A DNA stretch of 63,519 nucleotides, filler included, from Octopus bimaculoides (taxonomy: Eukaryota): the NCBI RefSeq assembly GCF_001194135.2. It is 9 parts of 8 records of this genome, joined end to end, with 100 filler letters (N's around TTAATTAATTAA, not from the genome) between each part and the next. Parts side by side here need not be neighbours in the genome. Positions count along the whole stretch, not along the records: positions 1 to 16,288 come from NC_068981.1; 8 more parts are not named here. The stretch is one strand, 5' to 3'. Both the position numbers and the translations under genes were made by a program. Below the pieces are notes generated by a model. The model had not been told where the DNA came from. It was given only the letters and a program-made list of their open reading frames with translations, and searched no databases. Below, one piece after another: positions 116-10,994 of the stretch; position 1 is the stretch's first letter, and each line of letters starts with the position of its first letter.

Positions 116-283
116 TGGGTTAGGGTTAGGGTTTTAGGGTTGGGTTAGGGTTATGGTTATGAGTATTTTGGAAAAATACTCATAACCCTAACCCTAACCC
201 TAACCCTAACTCTAAAACCCGAACCCTAACCCTAACCCTAACCCTAACTCTAAAACCCGAACCCTAACCCTAAAACCCTAAAG
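116..283. repeat. Telomere-like (TTAGGG)n/(CCCTAA)n inverted array with a central hairpin, probably part of a non-autonomous repeat extending to about 630
   Basis: Degenerate TTAGGG units at 116-160 and CCCTAA units at 185-283. Perfect 15-bp stem 155-169/173-187 with a GGA loop. Confidence 0.8.
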
Positions 284-1506
284 CTAAAACAAGTACAAAC
301 GCACGAACGATGTCATAAATAACAGTACCGCCGATAGTTGTTGTTGACAAACAACAGCACTAATTTTATTCAGGGGAAAAGATCCCATTACACCGTCACA
401 ACGTGTTGTTTACATTCCACAGCAGTAATTGTTTTCACTTCAACAGACGTCAGTGATTGGTTGAAATTACTGAAATACGACAATTTTAACACGAAATAAC
501 TTTAAAAAGATAAAATTTTCTCAATAACAGTAAGAGCAAAAGATGTTTTATATGACACATTCTACCAGTGTCCCAAGTTTGAAAGTGTTTCGTTAGAAAA
601 CAAATGGTGTCCGCCAAATCAGAAAGATCCACATTATTCTAGAAATAAGCATTATAAGGTTTCTTTTTATATAAAATTAGTGTACTCTTATGGTTTAGAT
701 TGTTTTATGTATTCTTCTTCTCTTACTGAACCCTTAAATCCTTTTCTATATTTCAATATTTTAATAGATAAATTTTGCTAAGTTTAGATGCACATTTTTC
801 CCGTACTTTTTTCCTGTACTTTTAATTCTCACACTTAGATCTCAATGTGACCTCCTTTGGTCTCCATTTTAGGCCGCTTTTAGTTAATAATCATAATATG
901 CTAAGTCACCACTGACCTTCCTCTTTTTGGTTATCATCTCGTCTCTACATATCATTATCTTGCTAGCATCTTCTGAGACATATTCTTTTATGTAGGTATG
1001 ACTGATTTTATGGTCATGGCGAAATAGGGGTAGGTAAGCGTATCTGACATTAATTAATTTATCACCAACAAGAACTGAACTGTCGATTCCTAATGGTTTT
1101 AATTCTAAGGGTATGTAGACTACTTGCTGCATCAGGTCTTTCGAATGTGATAAGGATAGAGATGGATGTAGATATATCACCATTCCTCTTTCTTGACCAC
1201 CATTATTTCCTTCTGCCACTCAAAATTATAGTAGGCTTTAGGTATTTTCTCCCTAAATTCATACTGCTATAATAATAGCAAAAAAGAAGCAATGTATTTT
1301 AGTCTCTAATACTGATGAAAAATTTGCTAAAAAATTATAATGGATTTCCTATATGTTGGAAATCTATATGATCGTACGCATCCGATGAGTACGGTTTATT
1401 TCAAATTGATGTAATGTTTGCATTGATCGATTAAATGGAACCGCTTGAAGCGGCCGTAATGCACTGATACCTGGACATTCTTGTTTTACTTATTTGCTTA
1501 CGCACA

Positions 1507-2885: not shown

Positions 2886-3120
2886 TTAACCTTCTTGTAT
2901 AGATTTTTTAAGATTATTCCAGAAAACATCACTTGTTGGGTTCGTCGTCGGAAAACATATATAACTCTGCATTTTGATTTGATGCTGTAATTGCAAAGGT
3001 AGAATGTCTACAGAGAGTTCTTCGAGCATTATGACAATTACCAAATCTCTTTCAGCGTGAACACATTCCATTTTAGCCATGTTATATTCAAACATACACC
3101 ACTCACTTGACAAAAAGCTC
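2886..3120 (-). CDS. TLR: Toll-like receptor, coding exon 2 (C-terminal half of TIR)
   Basis: Acceptor TTTAATTTCAG|G at 3121/3120. The phase-2 join AG+G=Arg gives LLSR-SFLSSEWCMFEYNMAKME...DVFWNNLKKSIQEG*, which supplies the TIR SxWC and box 3 FW motifs in frame. Total length 825 aa. Confidence 0.95.
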
Positions 3121-3282
3121 CTGAAATTAAACGTAATTATACATTGATATTATAACTTAATATATACATTAACAAATATCAAAATTTACTGGTAAAAACT
3201 AGAGGAGAGATGAAGACATGGGTGGGAAGAAGAAAGATTGAGAGGGAAAGAGGGTGGAAGTTATAATAATAATTATTATTAT

Positions 3283-3369
3283 AAGGCGGTGTGCTGGCAG
3301 GATCATTATCACGCCGGGAAAGATGCTTAGCGGCATTTCGTCCGTCTTTACCTTCTGAGTTCAAATTCT
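3283..3369 (+). mobile_element. SINE family A 5' fragment, inverted relative to the adjacent copy
   Basis: AAGGCGGTGTGCTGGCAG...GAGTTCAAATTC head. Confidence 0.75.
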
Positions 3370-3602
3370 TATTTCTTTATTGCCCACAAGGGGCTACACA
3401 TAGAAGGAACAAACAAGGACAGACAAAGGGATTAAGTCGATTACATCGACCCCAGTGCGTAACTGGTACTTAATTTATAGACCCCGAAAGGATGAAAAGC
3501 AAAGTCGACCTCGGCGGAATTTGAACTCAGAACGTAACGGCAGACGAAATACTGCTAAGCATTTCGCCCGGCGGGCTAACGTTTCTGCTAGCTCGCCGCC
3601 TT
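3370..3602 (-). mobile_element. tRNA-derived SINE, family A (GGCGGCGAGCTGGCAGAA head), near full length, in the TLR intron
   Basis: Matches many copies in the window, with the GAGTTCAAATTCC B-box-like motif and GTCGACTTTGCCTTTCATCC body. Confidence 0.85.
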
Positions 3603-3970
3603 ATTTTTTTTCTCTCTTTTTAAATAAAAAAAAAATTTTTTATTGTGACAGAGCAAACAATGAAGATCCCAAACTGGGAATACCCAGTTCTGGATGGAGN
3701 NNNNNNNNNNNNNNNNNNNNNNNNNNNNNNNNNNNNNNNNNNNNNNNNNNNNNNNNNNNNNNNNNNNNNNNNNNNNNNNNNNNNNNNNNNNNNNNNNNNN
3801 NNNNNNNNNNNNNNNNNNNNNNNNNNNNNNNNNNNNNNNNNNNNNNNNNNNNNNNNNNNNNNNNNNNNNNNNNNNNNNNNNNNNNNNNNNNNNNNNNNNN
3901 NNNNNNNNNNNNNNNNNNNNNNNATAGGTATCCCATTATTCCTTGTCCCGCAGTTATCGCCCTTTGATGA

Positions 3971-4043
3971 TGACGTCATAGCCGCCATCTTGTCACTGCC
4001 ATCGATTACATGGAGAATATTTCCTTCATCCGGTTTATATAAA
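3971..4043 (+). promoter_or_regulatory. Putative viral capsid promoter: CRE, YY1 site, TATA box
   Basis: TGACGTCA at 3971-3978, GCCGCCATCTTG at 3981-3992, TATATAAA at 4036-4043; VP ATG at 4072. Confidence 0.6.
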
Positions 4044-4071
4044 TAGACATGACCAAAGCTGTCTCGTCATT

Positions 4072-5245
4072 ATGCCACCGCCAAAGAAGCGGAAAGGATC
4101 CGACGACGAAGAGCCTTCCATGTCTAAGATACCATTCAGAAAGAAGAAAAAGTTATCTAAACCTGTCAATCGAACTTTACCAGGATACGACATTTTAGGA
4201 CCCGGGACAGATCGCGAAAAAAAAAAAAGAAATACTACCCAGCAAAAAGCGAACTAGATCAAGTCACGAAAGAGCACGATCTAGCCTATGGAAACCCAGA
4301 CGTTGATACTTGGGAAGTAGATAAACAATCCATTGGTAAAGCAATTGCACCAGGTCCAACTGGAATACTCGCATGTGCAGCAATCGCTGCAAAACATTGC
4401 GCAGGACTTGACTCCTACTTTCGTCCTACTCCTACTGACACTACTGATTTTGACGAAAATATGGCGGCTATGGATACTAGCGAAGAAACACCTAAGCAAG
4501 ATGGAGGAGGTGGATGGCAGGGATTCCGCTTAGGTGACGAGCCGGACATCCCCATCCCAACAGGCCCTTTCAAAAGAACAGTCACGTTCACTCGAAAATA
4601 TCACAATTGCATAAAAACCAATGACATGATTTCAGCGCAAGGAGAATTCGAAAGATTAGATTTCGATTCTACTGTCACTACAGGACCCACCAACTTCAAC
4701 AAAGCCTACGCACCAGGTTCCTGCAAATCGACAGACTACATCGTACCATACTACCTAACGACATGGGTGAAACCAATCGAATGGGAATGCATGCTATGAC
4801 CTGCCACGTCGTACAGAGTGAAGGAGTGCGGATTCAAAATCAAAAATATCACGTGTTTTCAGAATGGTTAATCAGCAAAAACGAAGACCAGTTCATAAAC
4901 AACCCACTTCCATACTTTCAAATTTATATCGACAGAGGCAAATATATCGGATACAACAATTTACGCGGGATTAGCCAGATACCAAACTCTGGATTTCAAA
5001 ATTGTTTCCCGACAACAGTCGAGCAACTCATACTATCAACATATGACTATCATTATGTTGCAAGCGTAGCATATTTAGAAGATATGGGCGTCGACTTTTC
5101 AAGTAGTACAGGCACAATACCCATGTACAAGCTACACGATTGGAGAGAAATGCACGATGTGCAAGAACTACGACAGAGAGATTCATTCGTCCATAAATGG
5201 ACAAACCACTCCCTTCTGAAAACGCCTCTCACAAATACAGAATGA
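4072..5245 (+). pseudogene. Endogenous parvoviral (densovirus-like) capsid VP1/VP2 gene, decayed and 3'-truncated
   Basis: MPPPKKRK NLS, then TLPGYDILGPG and, after a frameshift in A12 (4217-4228), ELDQVTKEHDLAY (parvoviral PLA2 motifs). The frame stays open from 4230 through a putative VP2 start at 4461 (GGGG, TVTFTRKYH). In-frame TGA at 4797, then PATSYRVKECGFKIKNIT, a second frameshift near 4860, then FINNPLPYFQIYIDRG. It ends where a SINE fragment begins, at about 5250. Confidence 0.88.
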
Positions 5246-5249
5246 GAGG

Positions 5250-5360
5250 CGTTCAAATTCTGTCGAGGTCGTCTTTACCTTTCATCCTTTCGCGGTCGAT
5301 AAAATATGTGCTCAATGTAATCGACTCATCTCCTCCCCGCAAATTGCTGACTTTATGGGA
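5250..5360 (+). mobile_element. SINE family A fragment at the 3' junction of the viral insert
   Basis: GTTCAAATTCTGTCGAGGTCGTCTTTACCTTTCATCCTTTCG resembles the family body. Confidence 0.7.
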
Positions 5361-5777
5361 AAATTTGAAACCATCTTCCTTTGTGTCTCCGTCTATACCG
5401 CTAAATTAGATGTCCTATAAATAGATATTAATAGAAAACACAAGACTAACAAACTGAAATAAGTTGATGTAATAAGAGAAATACTAGCATTTGAGGTTTG
5501 TGCTGCAGTATGACCACAGTCAAAATATTAAAGCCAATAAAAGGGTAAAAATATAAAACTCAATTTAAAGAAAATCTAAATTTTCTGTTTGAGAGCAAAT
5601 GATTTACTTAAACACTTCAAGCAAGTGTAGGGATTGACGGTTTAAATTTCTTTAAAAAATGGCTAAAATTTATCAAAACGTAAGGAAGCTTTGTTCATAG
5701 GCGAAAATAAGAGGAAAAAAAATTCGAAATGAGATTAATGCATTTTAACGGAATACTAATGAACTGTAAATATTTAC

Positions 5778-8020
5778 CTGCTAAGTAAAATAAGACATTT
5801 TCGACTGGACTGGATAGCAGACAATATATTTTCAGCAATCTGTTTACCTGCGGGAAAATCTCGATGATGGATATTCAGTTTAAACGTATCCTTTTCTTCA
5901 AGTTCTGGAATTAGATATTCAAAAACACAACCTCGATCTTCTTCTGCATAAGATACAAAAGCGTCATAAAGATATTCTCCAGTTTGTATTCTCTGATATG
6001 CGTATCGTTCTCGGATCATGTAATACAAATATCGTAGTTTCCATCTAAAATGGTAAACAAGAGCTCCGAAAGAAAAGCAACCCAGAAGCACAATAAGACA
6101 TGCTACAGTGATAATTATACCGATAAATGATGAACAACTGTGGTTAAGATAGGTTATAATCAAAGGAAGCCGGCTGTCTGTCAACTTCCACACTGTTCCG
6201 TTAGGATGAGTACATTTCGAGTACATTATTTTCAAATGTGCTGAATTGCGTACTTTGTGCAGCCAAGTGAGAAATCTAATTTGCGCACAACCACATTTCA
6301 AATTATTGCTTTGTATGTTGACAGTGAGTTTATGGTATTCAGATATCTTTTCAATAGCATTAAAAGTGTTTTCTGACAGTTCCTGTAAAATGTTTTTAGA
6401 TAAATCTAAATATGATAAATTTAACATATGACTAATCTTTACATCAAACGATTCCAATAAATTGATGTGTAAATTTAAGATTCTGAGATTTTTCAGCTGT
6501 AACAAACTGTTGTTTGATAAATATCGAATGTGGTTATTTGAAAGATATAATTCTTCGAGGTTGGTTAAATTTAGAAAAGCTTTACTGAAACCTTCTTCGG
6601 CAACTTGCCCTGAAATTCCTATTGCGTTATTTTCGATATTCAAAAGTCGCAGACCAGTGAAAAATGTGAAGAATTCGTTACTGATATTATTGCATTGATT
6701 GTGACTTAAATCCAGAATTTGTAATTGTTCTAAGCCTCGGACTGGGCCACTCCATGGACAAAATAAATTATTCGTTGCATTAATTAATCTTATTGCATTT
6801 GCATCTCTTATATGGAATGGTGGTATGGGAAATTGATAGTGGCAACCTTGTAGTAAGAGTGTTTTAAGAGATTTGGAGATTGTAAAACTGTAAGTAATAT
6901 CCCTATTGAATAATTTATAACGAAATAATGGAAGGTTTTTATGTGATAATGTCGTACTAATGTCGATTAATTTAATGTTGGATAAAGTCTTGATTTCAAA
7001 CAAATATTTTCCATATGTTAATATATTATTTTTCAAATATGCGTATTCCAATGTTTTGGGTAAAGAAGAAATAAAATTGGGCTCTATATATTCTAGTCTG
7101 TTATAGTTAAACTCAAATCTTTTCAGTGATGTATAATTTAGATAAAATGCTTCTCTCGCATATAAGGGCATTCCAAGGATATTCCTAACATTGATATTAT
7201 TGAGGGCAAGATATTCAAGATAATAAGTGGTGTGAAAATTTTTGAAGAAACTATTGTATCCCAAGCGAAAATTATTATATGAAACATCAAGAACTCTTAG
7301 ATTATTGAAACGTTGAAATATACGTGTACTAGCTGAATGTATTTTAGAGTAACTGAGATTCAAGAAGGCAACATATGGCGTATTCAGAAATATAACGTCA
7401 GTGAGGTGATTTATTTCTGAACTGTTCCGCTCTGTAGCAAAGCTAATATACTTTAACTTTGACAGTTTTAGATATCCCACTCCAAATACAGACTTTGAAG
7501 TCCCTGTTATATATAAATATTCCAGTGAAATTAAATGAGAAATAGTTTTATCGATATAGGTTGTAGACTGTTTTAAGAGGTTACCTCGTATTTTCAGAAT
7601 TTTCACTCTTGTTAAATTTCGGAAAAGTTTTATAGGAAAGGAACAATATCTGATAGATAGTCTGTTGTGCTCTAACGAGAGTTCTCTCAAAGACCACAAA
7701 CCTTGAAAGGTGGTCGGTTGTAAATATTCAAGGAGATTATCGTCAATTTTCAGCACCTCTAATAAATTCAAATGTCTCAAACTATCCGCTGAAATACTTT
7801 TAATACGATTTCGACTTAAATCTATTGACGTAACATTCTTTGGAAAAGTATCAGGTATTTGAGTTAGATTTTGGTCTGTACAGATTACAGTACAGCGGTT
7901 GAAAATAATCTCAGTACAGTTGCAAACATCAGGGCAGTCTGTTCGACAATTTGCAGTCACTTTAATAAATGTTTTCATGAAGTAAGCAAAAACCATAATG
8001 AATATTCTCTTCATTGTCAT
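5778..8020 (-). CDS. TLR: Toll-like receptor (single cysteine cluster type), coding exon 1: signal peptide, LRRNT, LRRs, LRRCT, TM, N-terminal half of TIR
   Basis: 748-aa ORF. Contains LRRNT CPDVCNC, many LxxLxLxxNxL repeats, LRRCT NNLKCGC, TM IGIIITVACLIVLLGCFSFGALVY, TIR box 1 YDAFVSY and BB loop HHRDFPAG. The ORF stops at a GT donor (AG|GTAAAT; intron starts at 5777). Confidence 0.97.
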
Positions 8021-8902: not shown

Positions 8903-9300
8903 GGCACAGGAGTGGCTGTGTGATAAGTAGCTTGCTTACCAACTACATGGTTCCGGGTTCAGTCCCGGGCAAGTGTCTTCTACTGTAGCATCAGGCCGAT
9001 CAAAGCCTTGTGAGTGGATTTGGTAAACAGAAACTGAAAGAAGCCCGTCATACATGTGCATATATATATATATATATATGTGCGTGTATACGTTTGTGTG
9101 AGTGTGTTTGTCCCCCCCCACCATCGCTTGACAACCGATGCTGGTGTGTTTACGTCCCCGTTACTTAGCGGTTCGGCAAAAAGTGGCCGATAGAATAAGT
9201 ACTAGGCTTACAAAGAATAAGTCCTGGTGTCGATTTGCTCGACTAAAGGCGGTGCTCCAGCATGGCCGCAGTCAAATGACTGAAGCAAGTAAATGAGTAA
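8903..9300 (+). mobile_element. tRNA-derived SINE, family B (GGCGCAGGAGTGGCTGTGTGG head)
   Basis: A-box/B-box-like motifs TGGCTGTGTGG and GGTTCAGTCC, an internal (TA)n tract and a GAGTAA tail. Similar copies lie near 14380, 18060, 27590, 40985 and 45849. Confidence 0.85.
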
Positions 9301-10994
9301 ATGAGTAATGCGGGCCGAGGGGCAGATAAATCGCATTTTTAAACATTTTCCCAGCGTTAAGGCTCGTAACTCGAAGAGTATCCAGTCGCTTTCCTCCAAA
9401 TTTGCAACAAACATTAATCAGGGTCCTCGAATTGCTGTTAACTAAAAAAAAAATTTCTGTCGCTGACTTTGCCCCCCACCACCACAAATGCAGATTAATC
9501 AGATTTGAGTATACTACACTGGGCTTTATCTTTGTTTTAGGCCATTTTCCGACGATAAAATATTGACAGTACTTATGCATCATAAGTAGCGTATAATATT
9601 TCATGAAAACGTGTTTGTCCAATTTGGCAGCGGGAATGAGAACATTAACATTTCTGTCGGCACCCTGTTGATGCTTCATGTTAACATCACGCGCACCACC
9701 GAGCCATGTGCGTGCGTGTGCGGCTGGGTAAAGGCGCAACACACCCATTCATCCATTCTCCAGAATTGCCCTGTTGATGTTTCACGTTTCCAGTCCTGCG
9801 CAACGAAGCATGGCCCGGCAGTATGTCTTTTTTCTATGTTATCCGTATCTAAACTAAATAATGCATAATGTTCATACAAAAAAACAAACAAAAAACTGCT
9901 GTTGTGACTCACAGCCATTTGAGTTTGACCGCGTTTCCACTTCCGGAAGCTACACTCATCACCTGCAAATAGTCCCCCCACCCCGTGTTCCCTACCTCGT
10001 TTAGTCGGACGAGTAAATACAGAGTGTCCCAGATTTAATGATGATTTGCGTGAAATCGGATGCATTTTTTTAAAACTCACTTTTATTTACGTTTATTATG
10101 TTTAATATCTATTAAAAGTGTATAAATTTTGAATTTTGTTTATAATTTTATTTTCATTCCTGTTGGACCCCTCTTATTTGTCCATGACAGTTTTTTTTCA
10201 ATTTGGCAGCAATCATTTCCTTTACCTCCATCCCCAAGATGAAGCAATCGTTTAGCTGAGCGTAAAGAACACGTTTAACTAGCAGTGCAGGAGCTAACTC
10301 CTGAAATGCTTCAAAATGTGTTTCACAACGCTAAGGAGAGATTTGGAGTATGCAGACATACAGACATGCTGAAAACTTTTAATAAAAGTTTGACGTAAGA
10401 TTTATAAATTTATTTGTTTTGGTAATAAACATAAAATTTGTCAGATTTTAAAAAAGAATTGCTTAATTTCACTGAAACAGATAGTTAATTCTGGAGCACT
10501 CTGTCTGGCGTAGCGTTGTTAGTTGTTGCGTTGCTCGAGTAAATATTCCCATCTTTTTGTTAAGCATATTGTATCAATGAGTATAGTATCCAAAATGTAT
10601 CTCTCTTTTATAGGCGGCGCTGTGTGGTTGAGAAGCTTGCTTTCCAGCCATGTCACCTTGGGTTCAGTCCCGCTGTGCGGCACGTTGGGCAATTCTCTTT
10701 CATTACAGCTCCGTGCCGATAAAAGCCTTGTGTATTATATAATTGCCATTACTGTATTGATATGTAAAATGACACATACAGCTCACTTATTGTCATATAA
10801 TAAACAAACAGAAGTTCGTGTATAAAACTGATCTTTTTCAACCTCAATTATTACATGTTTTTTTCTTATACAATACACACATACAGGAGGATTAAGTCTA
10901 TGAATATAACAACACTTTGAGGAAGAGTAAAAGTAATTACCCGATCAACGACCGGTATTACTGCTAGTGTTTAATAAAATTCAACTTATTTACC

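What the first reader, a model, noticed from the sequence alone, without database searches (positions are those of the whole stretch)
3924..5777. Densovirus-like capsid gene integrated antisense inside the TIR-splitting intron of a Toll-like receptor
Seen: the TLR exons join in frame across a canonical GT-AG intron (5777-3121). The viral VP (4072-5245, +) lies inside that intron, with no gap between it and exon 1. Every TLR pre-mRNA would therefore carry about 1.2 kb complementary to viral capsid mRNA. Established: in Aedes mosquitoes, antisense endogenous viral elements give rise to piRNAs, and TLRs are innate immune receptors. Inference: this could be an immune-regulated source of antiviral antisense RNA hosted by an immune receptor, or simply a neutral fossil marking past densovirus infection of the germ line.
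Basis: partly seen in the sequence, partly recalled or inferred. Interest (0 to 1): 0.92.

Follow-up and report, generated by a model that had tools for sequence, protein, structure and literature searches.

The report
Dead parvovirus capsid fragment in octopus TLR intron
An intron of an Octopus bimaculoides Toll-like receptor gene holds a broken, partial parvovirus capsid gene on the opposite strand; it looks like a neutral fossil that arrived with a SINE in one retrotransposition-type event, not an immune device.

Summary
On the minus strand lies the two-exon O. bimaculoides TLR gene (the joined exons match XP_014770880.1 at 100%). Its TIR domain is split by a phase-2 GT-AG intron (3121-5777). 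On the plus strand of that intron lies about 1.18 kb related to a parvoviral VP1.

- **What the viral piece is.** It covers only the first ~60% of a ~608-aa VP. It has two frameshifts and one or two in-frame stops, and the window has no NS1.
- **"Densovirus-like" is not shown.** Only the VP1u/PLA2 region is recognisable. Profile hits in the PDB are Parvovirinae VP1 proteins, and no Denso_VP4 or Parvo_coat Pfam family is hit. The closest relatives (38-46% aa) are unnamed ~4.4-kb contigs and cephalopod genomic copies.
- **How it got there.** The insert (3370-5250, including a 224-N gap) is absent from the orthologous O. vulgaris intron. It splits an older SINE and is flanked by an 11-nt target-site duplication. 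One end is exactly the canonical 3' tail of a second SINE. This points to LINE-type retrotransposition of a chimeric RNA carrying antisense VP, probably a secondary copy of an older EVE.
- **Function.** Nothing supports an antiviral small-RNA role.

This is an ordinary EVE with an unusual mode of arrival.

The parts
5778..8020 (-). TLR exon 1 (coding part): signal peptide, LRRNT, LRR ectodomain, transmembrane segment and first part of the TIR domain
   Evidence: The ORF is listed. Pfam finds LRR_8, LRRNT and TIR. The joined product is 100% identical to XP_014770880.1.
3121..5777 (-). Phase-2 GT-AG intron that splits the TIR domain. Its true length is unknown because of the N gap.
   Evidence: The donor AG|GTAAAT and acceptor TTTCAG|G are read. 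O. sinensis (10.9-kb intron) and O. vulgaris (8.5-kb intron) have the same two-exon structure.
2886..3120 (-). TLR exon 2 (coding part, including the stop codon): second part of the TIR domain
3283..3369 (+). Left half (tRNA-like head up to the B-box-like GAGTTCAAATTC) of an older intronic SINE, preceded by an (ATA)n microsatellite. It is orthologous to an uninterrupted SINE in the O. vulgaris intron.
   Evidence: blastn, the O. vulgaris sequence, and the alignment.
3359..3369 (.). Target-site duplication, left copy (GTTCAAATTCT)
   Evidence: O. vulgaris has a single copy.
3370..5250 (-). Inserted block, absent from O. vulgaris. Read on the TLR-sense strand it runs: antisense VP fragment, VP upstream region, N gap, A-rich stretch, full-length SINE.
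3370..3604 (-). Full-length SINE in TLR-sense orientation. Its canonical 3' tail abuts the left TSD copy, and it has no TSD of its own.
   Evidence: In one search, independent copies in O. vulgaris and O. sinensis lose homology at exactly this end. The O. vulgaris copy has an ordinary 9-nt TSD there.
3605..3699 (.). A/T-rich stretch of unknown origin between the SINE head and the gap. On the minus strand it contains AATAAA followed by an A-rich run that ends at the SINE head.
   Evidence: Read. No significant match in any fetched locus.
3700..3923 (.). Assembly gap (224 N)
3924..4071 (+). Non-coding region upstream of the VP start, with TGACGTCA and a TATA-like box. Probably virus-derived promoter DNA. 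It shares only short motifs with the upstream regions of relatives, and the match is not significant.
   Evidence: E about 0.2.
4072..5250 (+). Partial parvoviral VP1 pseudogene. It covers the N-terminus, the VP1u PLA2 region, a Gly-rich linker and the first part of the capsid body, corresponding to residues 1 to about 367 of a 608-aa relative. It has two frameshifts, one or two in-frame stops, and the 3' ~40% is missing.
5251..5261 (.). Target-site duplication, right copy (GTTCAAATTCT)
5251..5336 (+). Right half (body) of the older intronic SINE
   Evidence: (I14).

Best explanation
**What it is.** A dead, partial copy of a parvovirus VP1 capsid gene (an endogenous viral element, EVE) sits in the TIR-splitting intron of an intact O. 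bimaculoides TLR gene, antisense to it.

**How it arrived.** It did not arise by a virus integrating at this spot. A ~1.9-kb block (3370-5250) was inserted into a SINE already present in the intron. The inserting event has the signature of LINE-type target-primed reverse transcription:
- reverse transcription started at the 3' tail of a SINE RNA;
- it ran through the SINE and on into RNA lying 5' of it, either a read-through host transcript or a second template reached by template switching;
- that RNA carried the antisense strand of a VP-bearing sequence;
- copying stopped inside VP, which produced the truncation;
- an 11-nt target-site duplication was left behind.

The source was most likely an older EVE elsewhere in the genome that was transcribed antisense in the germ line.

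**What it does today.** The fragment is transcribed passively as part of the TLR pre-mRNA and removed with the intron. It has no function.

**Shown versus inferred.** Shown: the gene model, the parvoviral homology, the breaks, the empty site in O. vulgaris, the TSD, and the insert ending at the canonical SINE tail. Inferred: the RNA intermediate, the source locus, and the lack of function.
For: Parvoviral origin:
- Relatives found with the window's own piece carry Pfam PF08398 (the VP1u PLA2-like domain) above the curated cut-off.
- A profile of these relatives hits parvovirus VP1 chains in the PDB, E = 1e-8 to 5e-4.
- Full-length relatives sit next to a Parvo_NS1 (PF01057) gene.
- The window's translations keep the LPGY..LGPG and HDLAY motifs.

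Decay:
- Homology runs through three reading frames, includes stops, and ends at about residue 367 of 608.
- tblastn finds no NS1 and no VP C-terminus anywhere in the window.

Lineage-specific insertion:
- The O. sinensis and O. vulgaris orthologous loci have no VP-like sequence.
- O. vulgaris has one uninterrupted SINE exactly where the window has two halves, with an 11-nt repeat at both junctions.

Retrotransposition signature:
- The insert ends at the canonical SINE 3' terminus. Two independent copies define this end, and one of them has a normal 9-nt TSD there.
- The inner SINE lacks a TSD of its own.
- The other end of the insert is a truncation inside VP.

TLR gene intact.
Against: - The 224-N gap lies inside the block, so contiguity of the SINE and the VP part within one inserted unit is inferred, not read.
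- No source copy could be searched for, because no tool here covers the O. bimaculoides genome.
- Retro-copying of sequence 5' of a Pol III SINE is uncommon and needs read-through transcription or template switching.
- The O. sinensis site could not be resolved because of microsatellite noise.
- Lack of function is an argument from decay and distribution, not from expression or small-RNA data.
Confidence: 0.62

Rival explanations
1. Direct integration of viral DNA. During a germ-line infection, a fragment of parvoviral DNA was captured at a staggered double-strand break in the intronic SINE by host end-joining. Fill-in of the overhangs gave the 11-nt duplication. The inner SINE either arrived separately or was already attached to the captured DNA.
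For: - Parvoviral EVEs are generally thought to arise by DNA-level capture (own knowledge).
- The region upstream of the VP start, with TATA-like and TGACGTCA motifs, is retained, so the fragment is not a copy of a processed VP mRNA.
- The gap could hide a more complex structure.
Against: - The insert's end coincides to the base with the canonical SINE 3' terminus, and the inner SINE has no TSD of its own. Under this model that is an unexplained coincidence.
- An 11-nt TSD is in the range seen for an ordinary insertion of this SINE family (9 nt).
Confidence: 0.2
2. Functional antisense source. TLR transcription supplies RNA antisense to VP, which is processed into piRNA- or siRNA-like guides against a related virus.
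For: - The geometry is right. The whole VP fragment is antisense within the TLR primary transcript.
- The insertion signature itself implies that an antisense VP-bearing RNA once existed in germ cells.
- EVE-derived antiviral piRNAs are established in Aedes, and molluscs express piRNAs in soma and germ line (own knowledge).
Against: - There are no small-RNA or expression data.
- The locus is a single intron, not a known piRNA cluster.
- The insert is absent from O. vulgaris, and no VP-like sequence is found at the O. sinensis locus, so there is no sign of retention by selection.
- The nearest known relatives are only 38-46% identical in protein, so no known virus could be targeted by base pairing.
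- The orientation is already explained by the insertion mechanism.
Confidence: 0.06
3. Artefact. Viral or contaminant reads were mis-assembled or mis-scaffolded into the TLR locus.
For: - This is a draft assembly with an N gap directly beside the viral stretch.
- Exact look-ups of two window ORFs found no second record.
Against: - The VP fragment is contiguous, without any N, with a host SINE half, ~440 nt of intron that aligns to the O. vulgaris and O. sinensis introns, and TLR exon 1.
- The matching SINE half and the TSD on the far side of the gap fit the O. vulgaris empty site to the base.
- The gene is decayed, as expected of host DNA.
Confidence: 0.03

Closest known systems
Parvovirus-related sequences and EVEs in invertebrate genomes, including Octopus bimaculoides (François et al. 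2016, PMC5013282)
   Same: - It is a fragmentary, stop-containing parvoviral gene embedded in host DNA.
- That paper's supplement already lists an O. bimaculoides WGS hit and an NS1-like protein.
- It places marine-mollusc sequences outside the known genera, nearer to the vertebrate parvoviruses. This matches the Parvovirinae-only PDB hits found here.
   Different: - This copy is a VP1 fragment, not NS1.
- Its exact position, the empty orthologous site, the TSD and the SINE-tail end are worked out here. I found no sign that they have been described.
LINE-mediated retrocopies: chimeric retrogenes made by template switching, 5' transduction, and L1-mediated endogenisation of bornavirus N genes (own knowledge)
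   Same: - Target-site duplication.
- An intact 3' end at a retroelement tail.
- 5' truncation.
- A viral sequence carried passively by host retrotransposition machinery.
   Different: - The virus here is a DNA virus, and the strand copied is antisense to the viral gene. The template was therefore probably a host transcript of an older EVE, not a viral mRNA.
- The 3' end is a SINE tail, not poly(A).
- The partner LINE is unknown.
EVE-derived antiviral piRNAs in Aedes mosquitoes (own knowledge)
   Same: A viral fragment oriented antisense to the host transcription unit.
   Different: - There the EVEs lie in piRNA clusters, derive mostly from RNA viruses, and match circulating viruses closely.
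- Here the fragment lies in a single intron of a protein-coding gene, no small-RNA evidence exists, and no close viral relative is known.
IHHNV-derived EVEs in crustacean genomes (PMC12287923; abstract only)
   Same: Parvoviridae-derived EVEs, both ancient and recent, are scattered through the genomes of aquatic invertebrates.
   Different: - That is a different subfamily (Hamaparvovirinae, whose VP lacks PLA2; own knowledge).
- The fragment here keeps the PLA2 motifs.

Membership tests
Parvoviridae (VP1 capsid protein) | N-terminal VP1-unique region with the PLA2 motifs (Ca-binding YxGxG loop, catalytic HDxxY) | tested here: met
   - The motifs LPGYDILGPG and HDLAY are visible in the window's translations.
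- Relatives retrieved with the window's own piece score above the PF08398 cut-off.
- A profile of these relatives hits parvovirus VP1 chains in the PDB, E = 1e-8.
- The window's separate pieces alone give no Pfam hit, because a frameshift splits the domain.
Parvoviridae (VP1 capsid protein) | Jelly-roll capsid body recognisable as Parvo_coat or Denso_VP4 | tested here: not met
   - There is no Pfam hit outside PLA2 for the window pieces or for full-length relatives.
- The full-length profile matches PDB capsids only over VP1u.
- The AlphaFold model of the best relative is too poor (pLDDT 38) for a fold search.
Parvoviridae (genome context) | NS1/Rep with an SF3 helicase encoded next to VP | tested here: met
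   This holds for the relatives only. L001, L002, L007 and L008 carry a PF01057 Parvo_NS1 gene beside VP, and it hits AAV Rep40/68 in the PDB. The window itself has no NS1.
   - There is no Denso_VP4 hit.
- All named hits are Parvovirinae VP1 or Rep proteins.
- No phylogeny with classified members could be built, because no named densovirus came back from any search.
- The host is an invertebrate, which is the only 'denso' trait.
Endogenous viral element | Virus-derived sequence contiguous with host DNA, decayed, and with an empty orthologous site in a related species | tested here: met
   - It is contiguous with host intron sequence and TLR exon 1.
- It has frameshifts, stops and a truncation.
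- The empty site is present in O. vulgaris.
LINE-type (TPRT) retrotransposition insert | Target-site duplication flanking the insert | tested here: met
   The 11-nt GTTCAAATTCT occurs at 3359-3369 and at 5251-5261, and as a single copy in O. vulgaris.
LINE-type (TPRT) retrotransposition insert | 3' end of the insert is the 3' end of a retroelement RNA; the 5' end is variable or truncated | tested here: met
   The canonical SINE tail lies at 3370, as defined by independent copies. The other end falls inside VP.
LINE-type (TPRT) retrotransposition insert | An identifiable source locus or source RNA | not testable with these tools
   No tool here searches the O. bimaculoides genome. Exact-protein look-ups found nothing.
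piRNA-producing EVE (Aedes type) | Antisense 24-32-nt small RNAs with 1U bias; location in a piRNA cluster | not testable with these tools
   No small-RNA data are available.
piRNA-producing EVE (Aedes type) | Close nucleotide match to a circulating virus | tested here: not met
   The best relatives are 38-46% identical in protein, and the IMG/VR scan found none. Viruses that have not been sampled cannot be excluded.
Toll-like receptor | LRR ectodomain, single transmembrane segment, cytoplasmic TIR domain | tested here: met
   Pfam finds LRRNT, LRR_8, LRR_4, TIR and TIR_2. Named TLR orthologues exist in Octopus, Argonauta and bivalves.

The most novel reading that the evidence does not exclude
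The VP fragment is a fossil of an antisense EVE transcript. A germ-line RNA carrying the complement of a parvoviral capsid gene was reverse-transcribed from a SINE tail and pasted into the TLR intron. A DNA-virus EVE was thus multiplied by host retrotransposition. The fragment also belongs to an undescribed cephalopod parvovirus lineage whose intact relatives encode VP upstream of NS1 on the same strand, the reverse of every classified member of the family that I know of.
Probability: 0.35. Interest if true: 0.55.

Novelty: new member of a known kind. Interest (0 to 1): 0.3.

Why it matters
Parvoviral EVEs in invertebrates, including this octopus, are already on record, and one landing in an intron of an immune gene is expected by chance. 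The biological weight of the headline claim is therefore low.

Two side results may be useful:
- **A base-exact example of EVE spread by retrotransposition.** Here a DNA-virus remnant appears to have been moved by SINE/LINE retrotransposition. EVE counts in genomes rich in retroelements may therefore overstate the number of independent viral integrations, and datings that treat each copy as an infection would be biased.
- **An undescribed cephalopod parvovirus-like lineage.** These sequences have recognisable PLA2 and NS1 domains but an unrecognisable capsid body, and a consistent VP-then-NS1 gene order. This deserves a proper phylogenetic description.

Tried and rejected
Searches that found nothing or could not be used:
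- Pfam, PDB (phmmer) and PHROGs on each reading-frame piece of the window's VP gave no hits.
- The word-indexed protein search with the last piece gave no hits.
- The AlphaFold2 model of the best full-length relative, built from a 15-sequence alignment, had pLDDT 38. It was unusable, so no fold search was run.
- The full-length VP profile matched PDB chains only over VP1u.
- The IMG/VR scan with the VP alignment found nothing.
- Exact look-ups of two window ORFs in public assemblies, meant to bridge the gap or find transcripts, found no record.
- Rfam and tRNA scans of the window found nothing, so the SINE head is not recognised as a tRNA.
- Four literature searches for cephalopod or octopus parvoviral EVEs found nothing. 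Only François et al. 2016 lists O. bimaculoides.

Partial or weak results:
- Alignment of the region upstream of VP with the relatives' upstream regions shows only short shared motifs, which are not significant.
- The empty or filled state of the O. sinensis site could not be resolved because microsatellite matches swamp the comparison. tblastn shows only that no VP-like sequence is in that locus.

Readings rejected:
- An intact or expressed capsid gene, because of the breaks and the truncation.
- A separate later insertion of the inner SINE, because it has no TSD of its own.
- Loss of the insert in O. vulgaris by precise excision, which is far less likely than a gain in the O. bimaculoides lineage.

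Disclosure: my early notebook entries and some script outputs show the coordinates of the reading-frame pieces I used as queries. This report does not repeat them.
Full report
**Host gene**

The window is Octopus bimaculoides DNA. The 748-aa minus-strand ORF (5774-8020) has LRRNT, many LRRs and the first third of a TIR domain. A 77-aa stretch at 2886-3119 carries the next part of the TIR.

Exon 1 ends AG|GTAAAT, with the GT at 5777-5776. Exon 2 starts after TTTCAG| at 3120. The join is in frame (phase 2) and reads LILLSR/SFLSSEWCMFEY. The 825-aa joined product matches XP_014770880.1, 'toll-like receptor 4 [Octopus bimaculoides]', at 100% identity over 100% of its length. It has 84% orthologues in O. 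sinensis and O. vulgaris and a 65% orthologue in Argonauta hians, all with the same junction sequence. tblastn places the same two exons in the O. sinensis (L003) and O. vulgaris (L004) loci, 10.9 and 8.5 kb apart.

**The viral-like stretch**

Three-frame translation of 3925-5460 shows a plus-strand reading that starts with ATG at 4072. It carries LPGYDILGPG and, further on, HDLAY, a Gly-rich stretch, and sequence that runs on to about 5240. This reading is spread over three frames.

None of the separate pieces hits Pfam, PDB or PHROGs on its own. The exhaustive HMMER search with the largest piece found 18 proteins, the best a 608-aa protein at E = 3.9e-23 and 38% identity. Five of these relatives score above the curated cut-off of PF08398, the PLA2-like domain of parvoviral VP1. 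A profile of 13 of them hits 32 parvovirus VP1 chains in the PDB (adeno-associated viruses and others), E = 1e-8 to 5e-4, always over the VP1-unique region.

Full-length relatives lie on 4.1-4.5-kb contigs assembled from public sequencing runs. A gene with the Parvo_NS1 helicase domain (PF01057) lies directly beside VP and also hits AAV Rep40/68 in the PDB. The stretch is therefore parvoviral beyond reasonable doubt.

**How much of the gene is there, and in what state**

tblastn of the 608-aa relative against the window covers its residues 1 to about 367, at 38-46% identity, E = 1e-35 and 3e-33. The VP gene has:
- two frameshifts;
- one or two in-frame stops, depending on where homology is taken to end;
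- no 3' ~40%.

No NS1 and no VP C-terminus occur anywhere else in the window.

**Is it a densovirus?**

This was tested and not shown.
- No window piece or relative hits Denso_VP4 or Parvo_coat.
- The full-length profile matches solved capsids only over VP1u.
- Every named hit, for VP and for the neighbouring NS1, is from the Parvovirinae.
- A structure prediction for the best relative was too poor to use, pLDDT 38.

François et al. 2016 (PMC5013282) already reported parvovirus-related sequences in O. bimaculoides. They also found that sequences from marine molluscs fall outside the known genera and nearer to the vertebrate parvoviruses. 'Parvovirus-family, subfamily unresolved' is the supportable label.

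Other relatives are genomic copies in O. vulgaris (a 'Phospholipase A2-like domain-containing protein' on an 84-Mb chromosome) and Acanthosepion pharaonis, plus a 76-kb ENA contig of unknown species. This is a cephalopod-wide family of EVEs.

**How the fragment got into the intron**

Neither orthologous locus contains VP-like sequence. blastn of the intron against O. vulgaris gives a colinear series on the exon-1 side down to 5251. Window 5251-5336 and window 3263-3368 match adjacent, slightly overlapping parts of one O. vulgaris SINE.

Reading the O. vulgaris intron and aligning the pieces separately shows one uninterrupted SINE after an (ATA)n microsatellite. In O. bimaculoides the same microsatellite and SINE head run to ...GAGTTCAAATTCT at 3369. 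The SINE body resumes with GTTCAAATTCT... at 5251. The 11 nt are present once in O. vulgaris and twice here, which is a target-site duplication. The insert is therefore 3370-5250. The split SINE also validates the scaffold join across the 224-N gap.

The 3370 end of the insert is the 3' tail of a second, full-length SINE (3370-3604) lying in TLR-sense orientation. Independent copies of this SINE in O. vulgaris and O. sinensis lose homology at exactly that base. The O. vulgaris copy shows an ordinary 9-nt duplication (ACGGATATC) hugging head and tail. In the window the inner SINE has no duplication of its own. The partner of the tail-side duplication lies 1.65 kb beyond the SINE head, on the far side of the VP fragment.

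Read on the TLR-sense strand, the insert is: 5'-truncated antisense VP, VP upstream region, gap, a stretch with AATAAA and an A-rich run, SINE, then the TSD. This is the pattern left by LINE-type target-primed reverse transcription that starts at the SINE tail and continues into RNA 5' of the SINE, either a read-through transcript or a second template after a switch.

The strand copied is antisense to VP, and the region upstream of the VP TATA-like box is included. The template was therefore not a viral mRNA. The simplest source is an older EVE elsewhere in the genome, transcribed antisense in the germ line. This last step is inference. The gap and the lack of a searchable O. bimaculoides genome leave it untested.

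**Function**

Nothing else supports a role.
- The fragment is decayed and truncated.
- It is absent from a congener.
- Its orientation follows from the insertion mechanism.
- It lies in an ordinary intron.
- The nearest known relatives are about 40% identical in protein, so no known virus could be recognised by base pairing.

Octopus genomes are rich in introns and retroelements and hold many copies of this EVE family. One copy antisense in an intron of one of many immune genes is therefore not surprising (inference). I rate the functional reading at about 6%, the artefact reading at about 3%, and direct DNA capture at about 20%.

**Verdict**

The element is a new member of a known kind. The base-exact evidence for retrotransposition-mediated spread of a DNA-virus EVE, and the unusual gene order in the relatives, are the only parts likely to interest a specialist.

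Noticed in passing
L001 228-3645; L002 251-3867; L007 337-3778; L008 263-3973; L006 5610-11352: In every contig that holds both genes, the VP gene lies upstream of the Parvo_NS1 gene on the same strand, with 37-510 nt between them. This is the reverse of the NS-then-VP order of the classified parvoviruses I know of. In the genomic contig L006 an NS1 C-terminal fragment also precedes VP by about 1.1 kb, which suggests a head-to-tail array. VP and NS1 are intact in L001 and L002 and broken in L006 and L008.
   Followed up: partly
L008-L011 (runs SRR8281678, SRR8281665, SRR8281675, SRR29271462): The same degraded VP product (a 288-aa piece followed by a 338-aa piece) recurs in contigs from four different sequencing runs. 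It is a fixed genomic copy, or a transcribed EVE, of an unidentified host. The run metadata were not available to me.
   Followed up: no
window 171-284: Interstitial telomere-like repeat, (TAACCC)n with variants, near the start of the piece.
   Followed up: no
L004 19417-20277 and the N-terminus of P0003: O. vulgaris has a partial second copy of TLR exon 1 (75% identical in protein) about 11 kb upstream of the orthologue. The annotated 880-aa O. vulgaris protein begins with a TIR fragment. This suggests tandem TLR paralogues fused in the gene model.
   Followed up: no
window 3375-3380 and 3640-3650 (minus strand): The insert brings two AATAAA signals into the intron in TLR-sense orientation. 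If they were used, they would give transcripts that end before the second TIR exon. No expression data were available to check this.
   Followed up: no
window 8967-9301 and 14438-14770: Two copies of another dispersed repeat, 81-85% identical over 150-240 nt, each next to (TA/TG)n microsatellites. The family was not identified.
   Followed up: no
window 10994-11682 (minus strand): Short ORFs whose sequence reminded me of a mariner-type transposase remnant. Pfam gave no hit at E <= 0.01, so this stays a recollection, not a finding.
   Followed up: partly
window 3121-5777 versus L003 8236-19153 and L004 33434-41941: The TIR-splitting intron is about 2.7 kb in this assembly (gap size uncertain), against 10.9 kb in O. 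sinensis and 8.5 kb in O. vulgaris. Most of the extra sequence in the other two species is microsatellite and SINE.
   Followed up: partly
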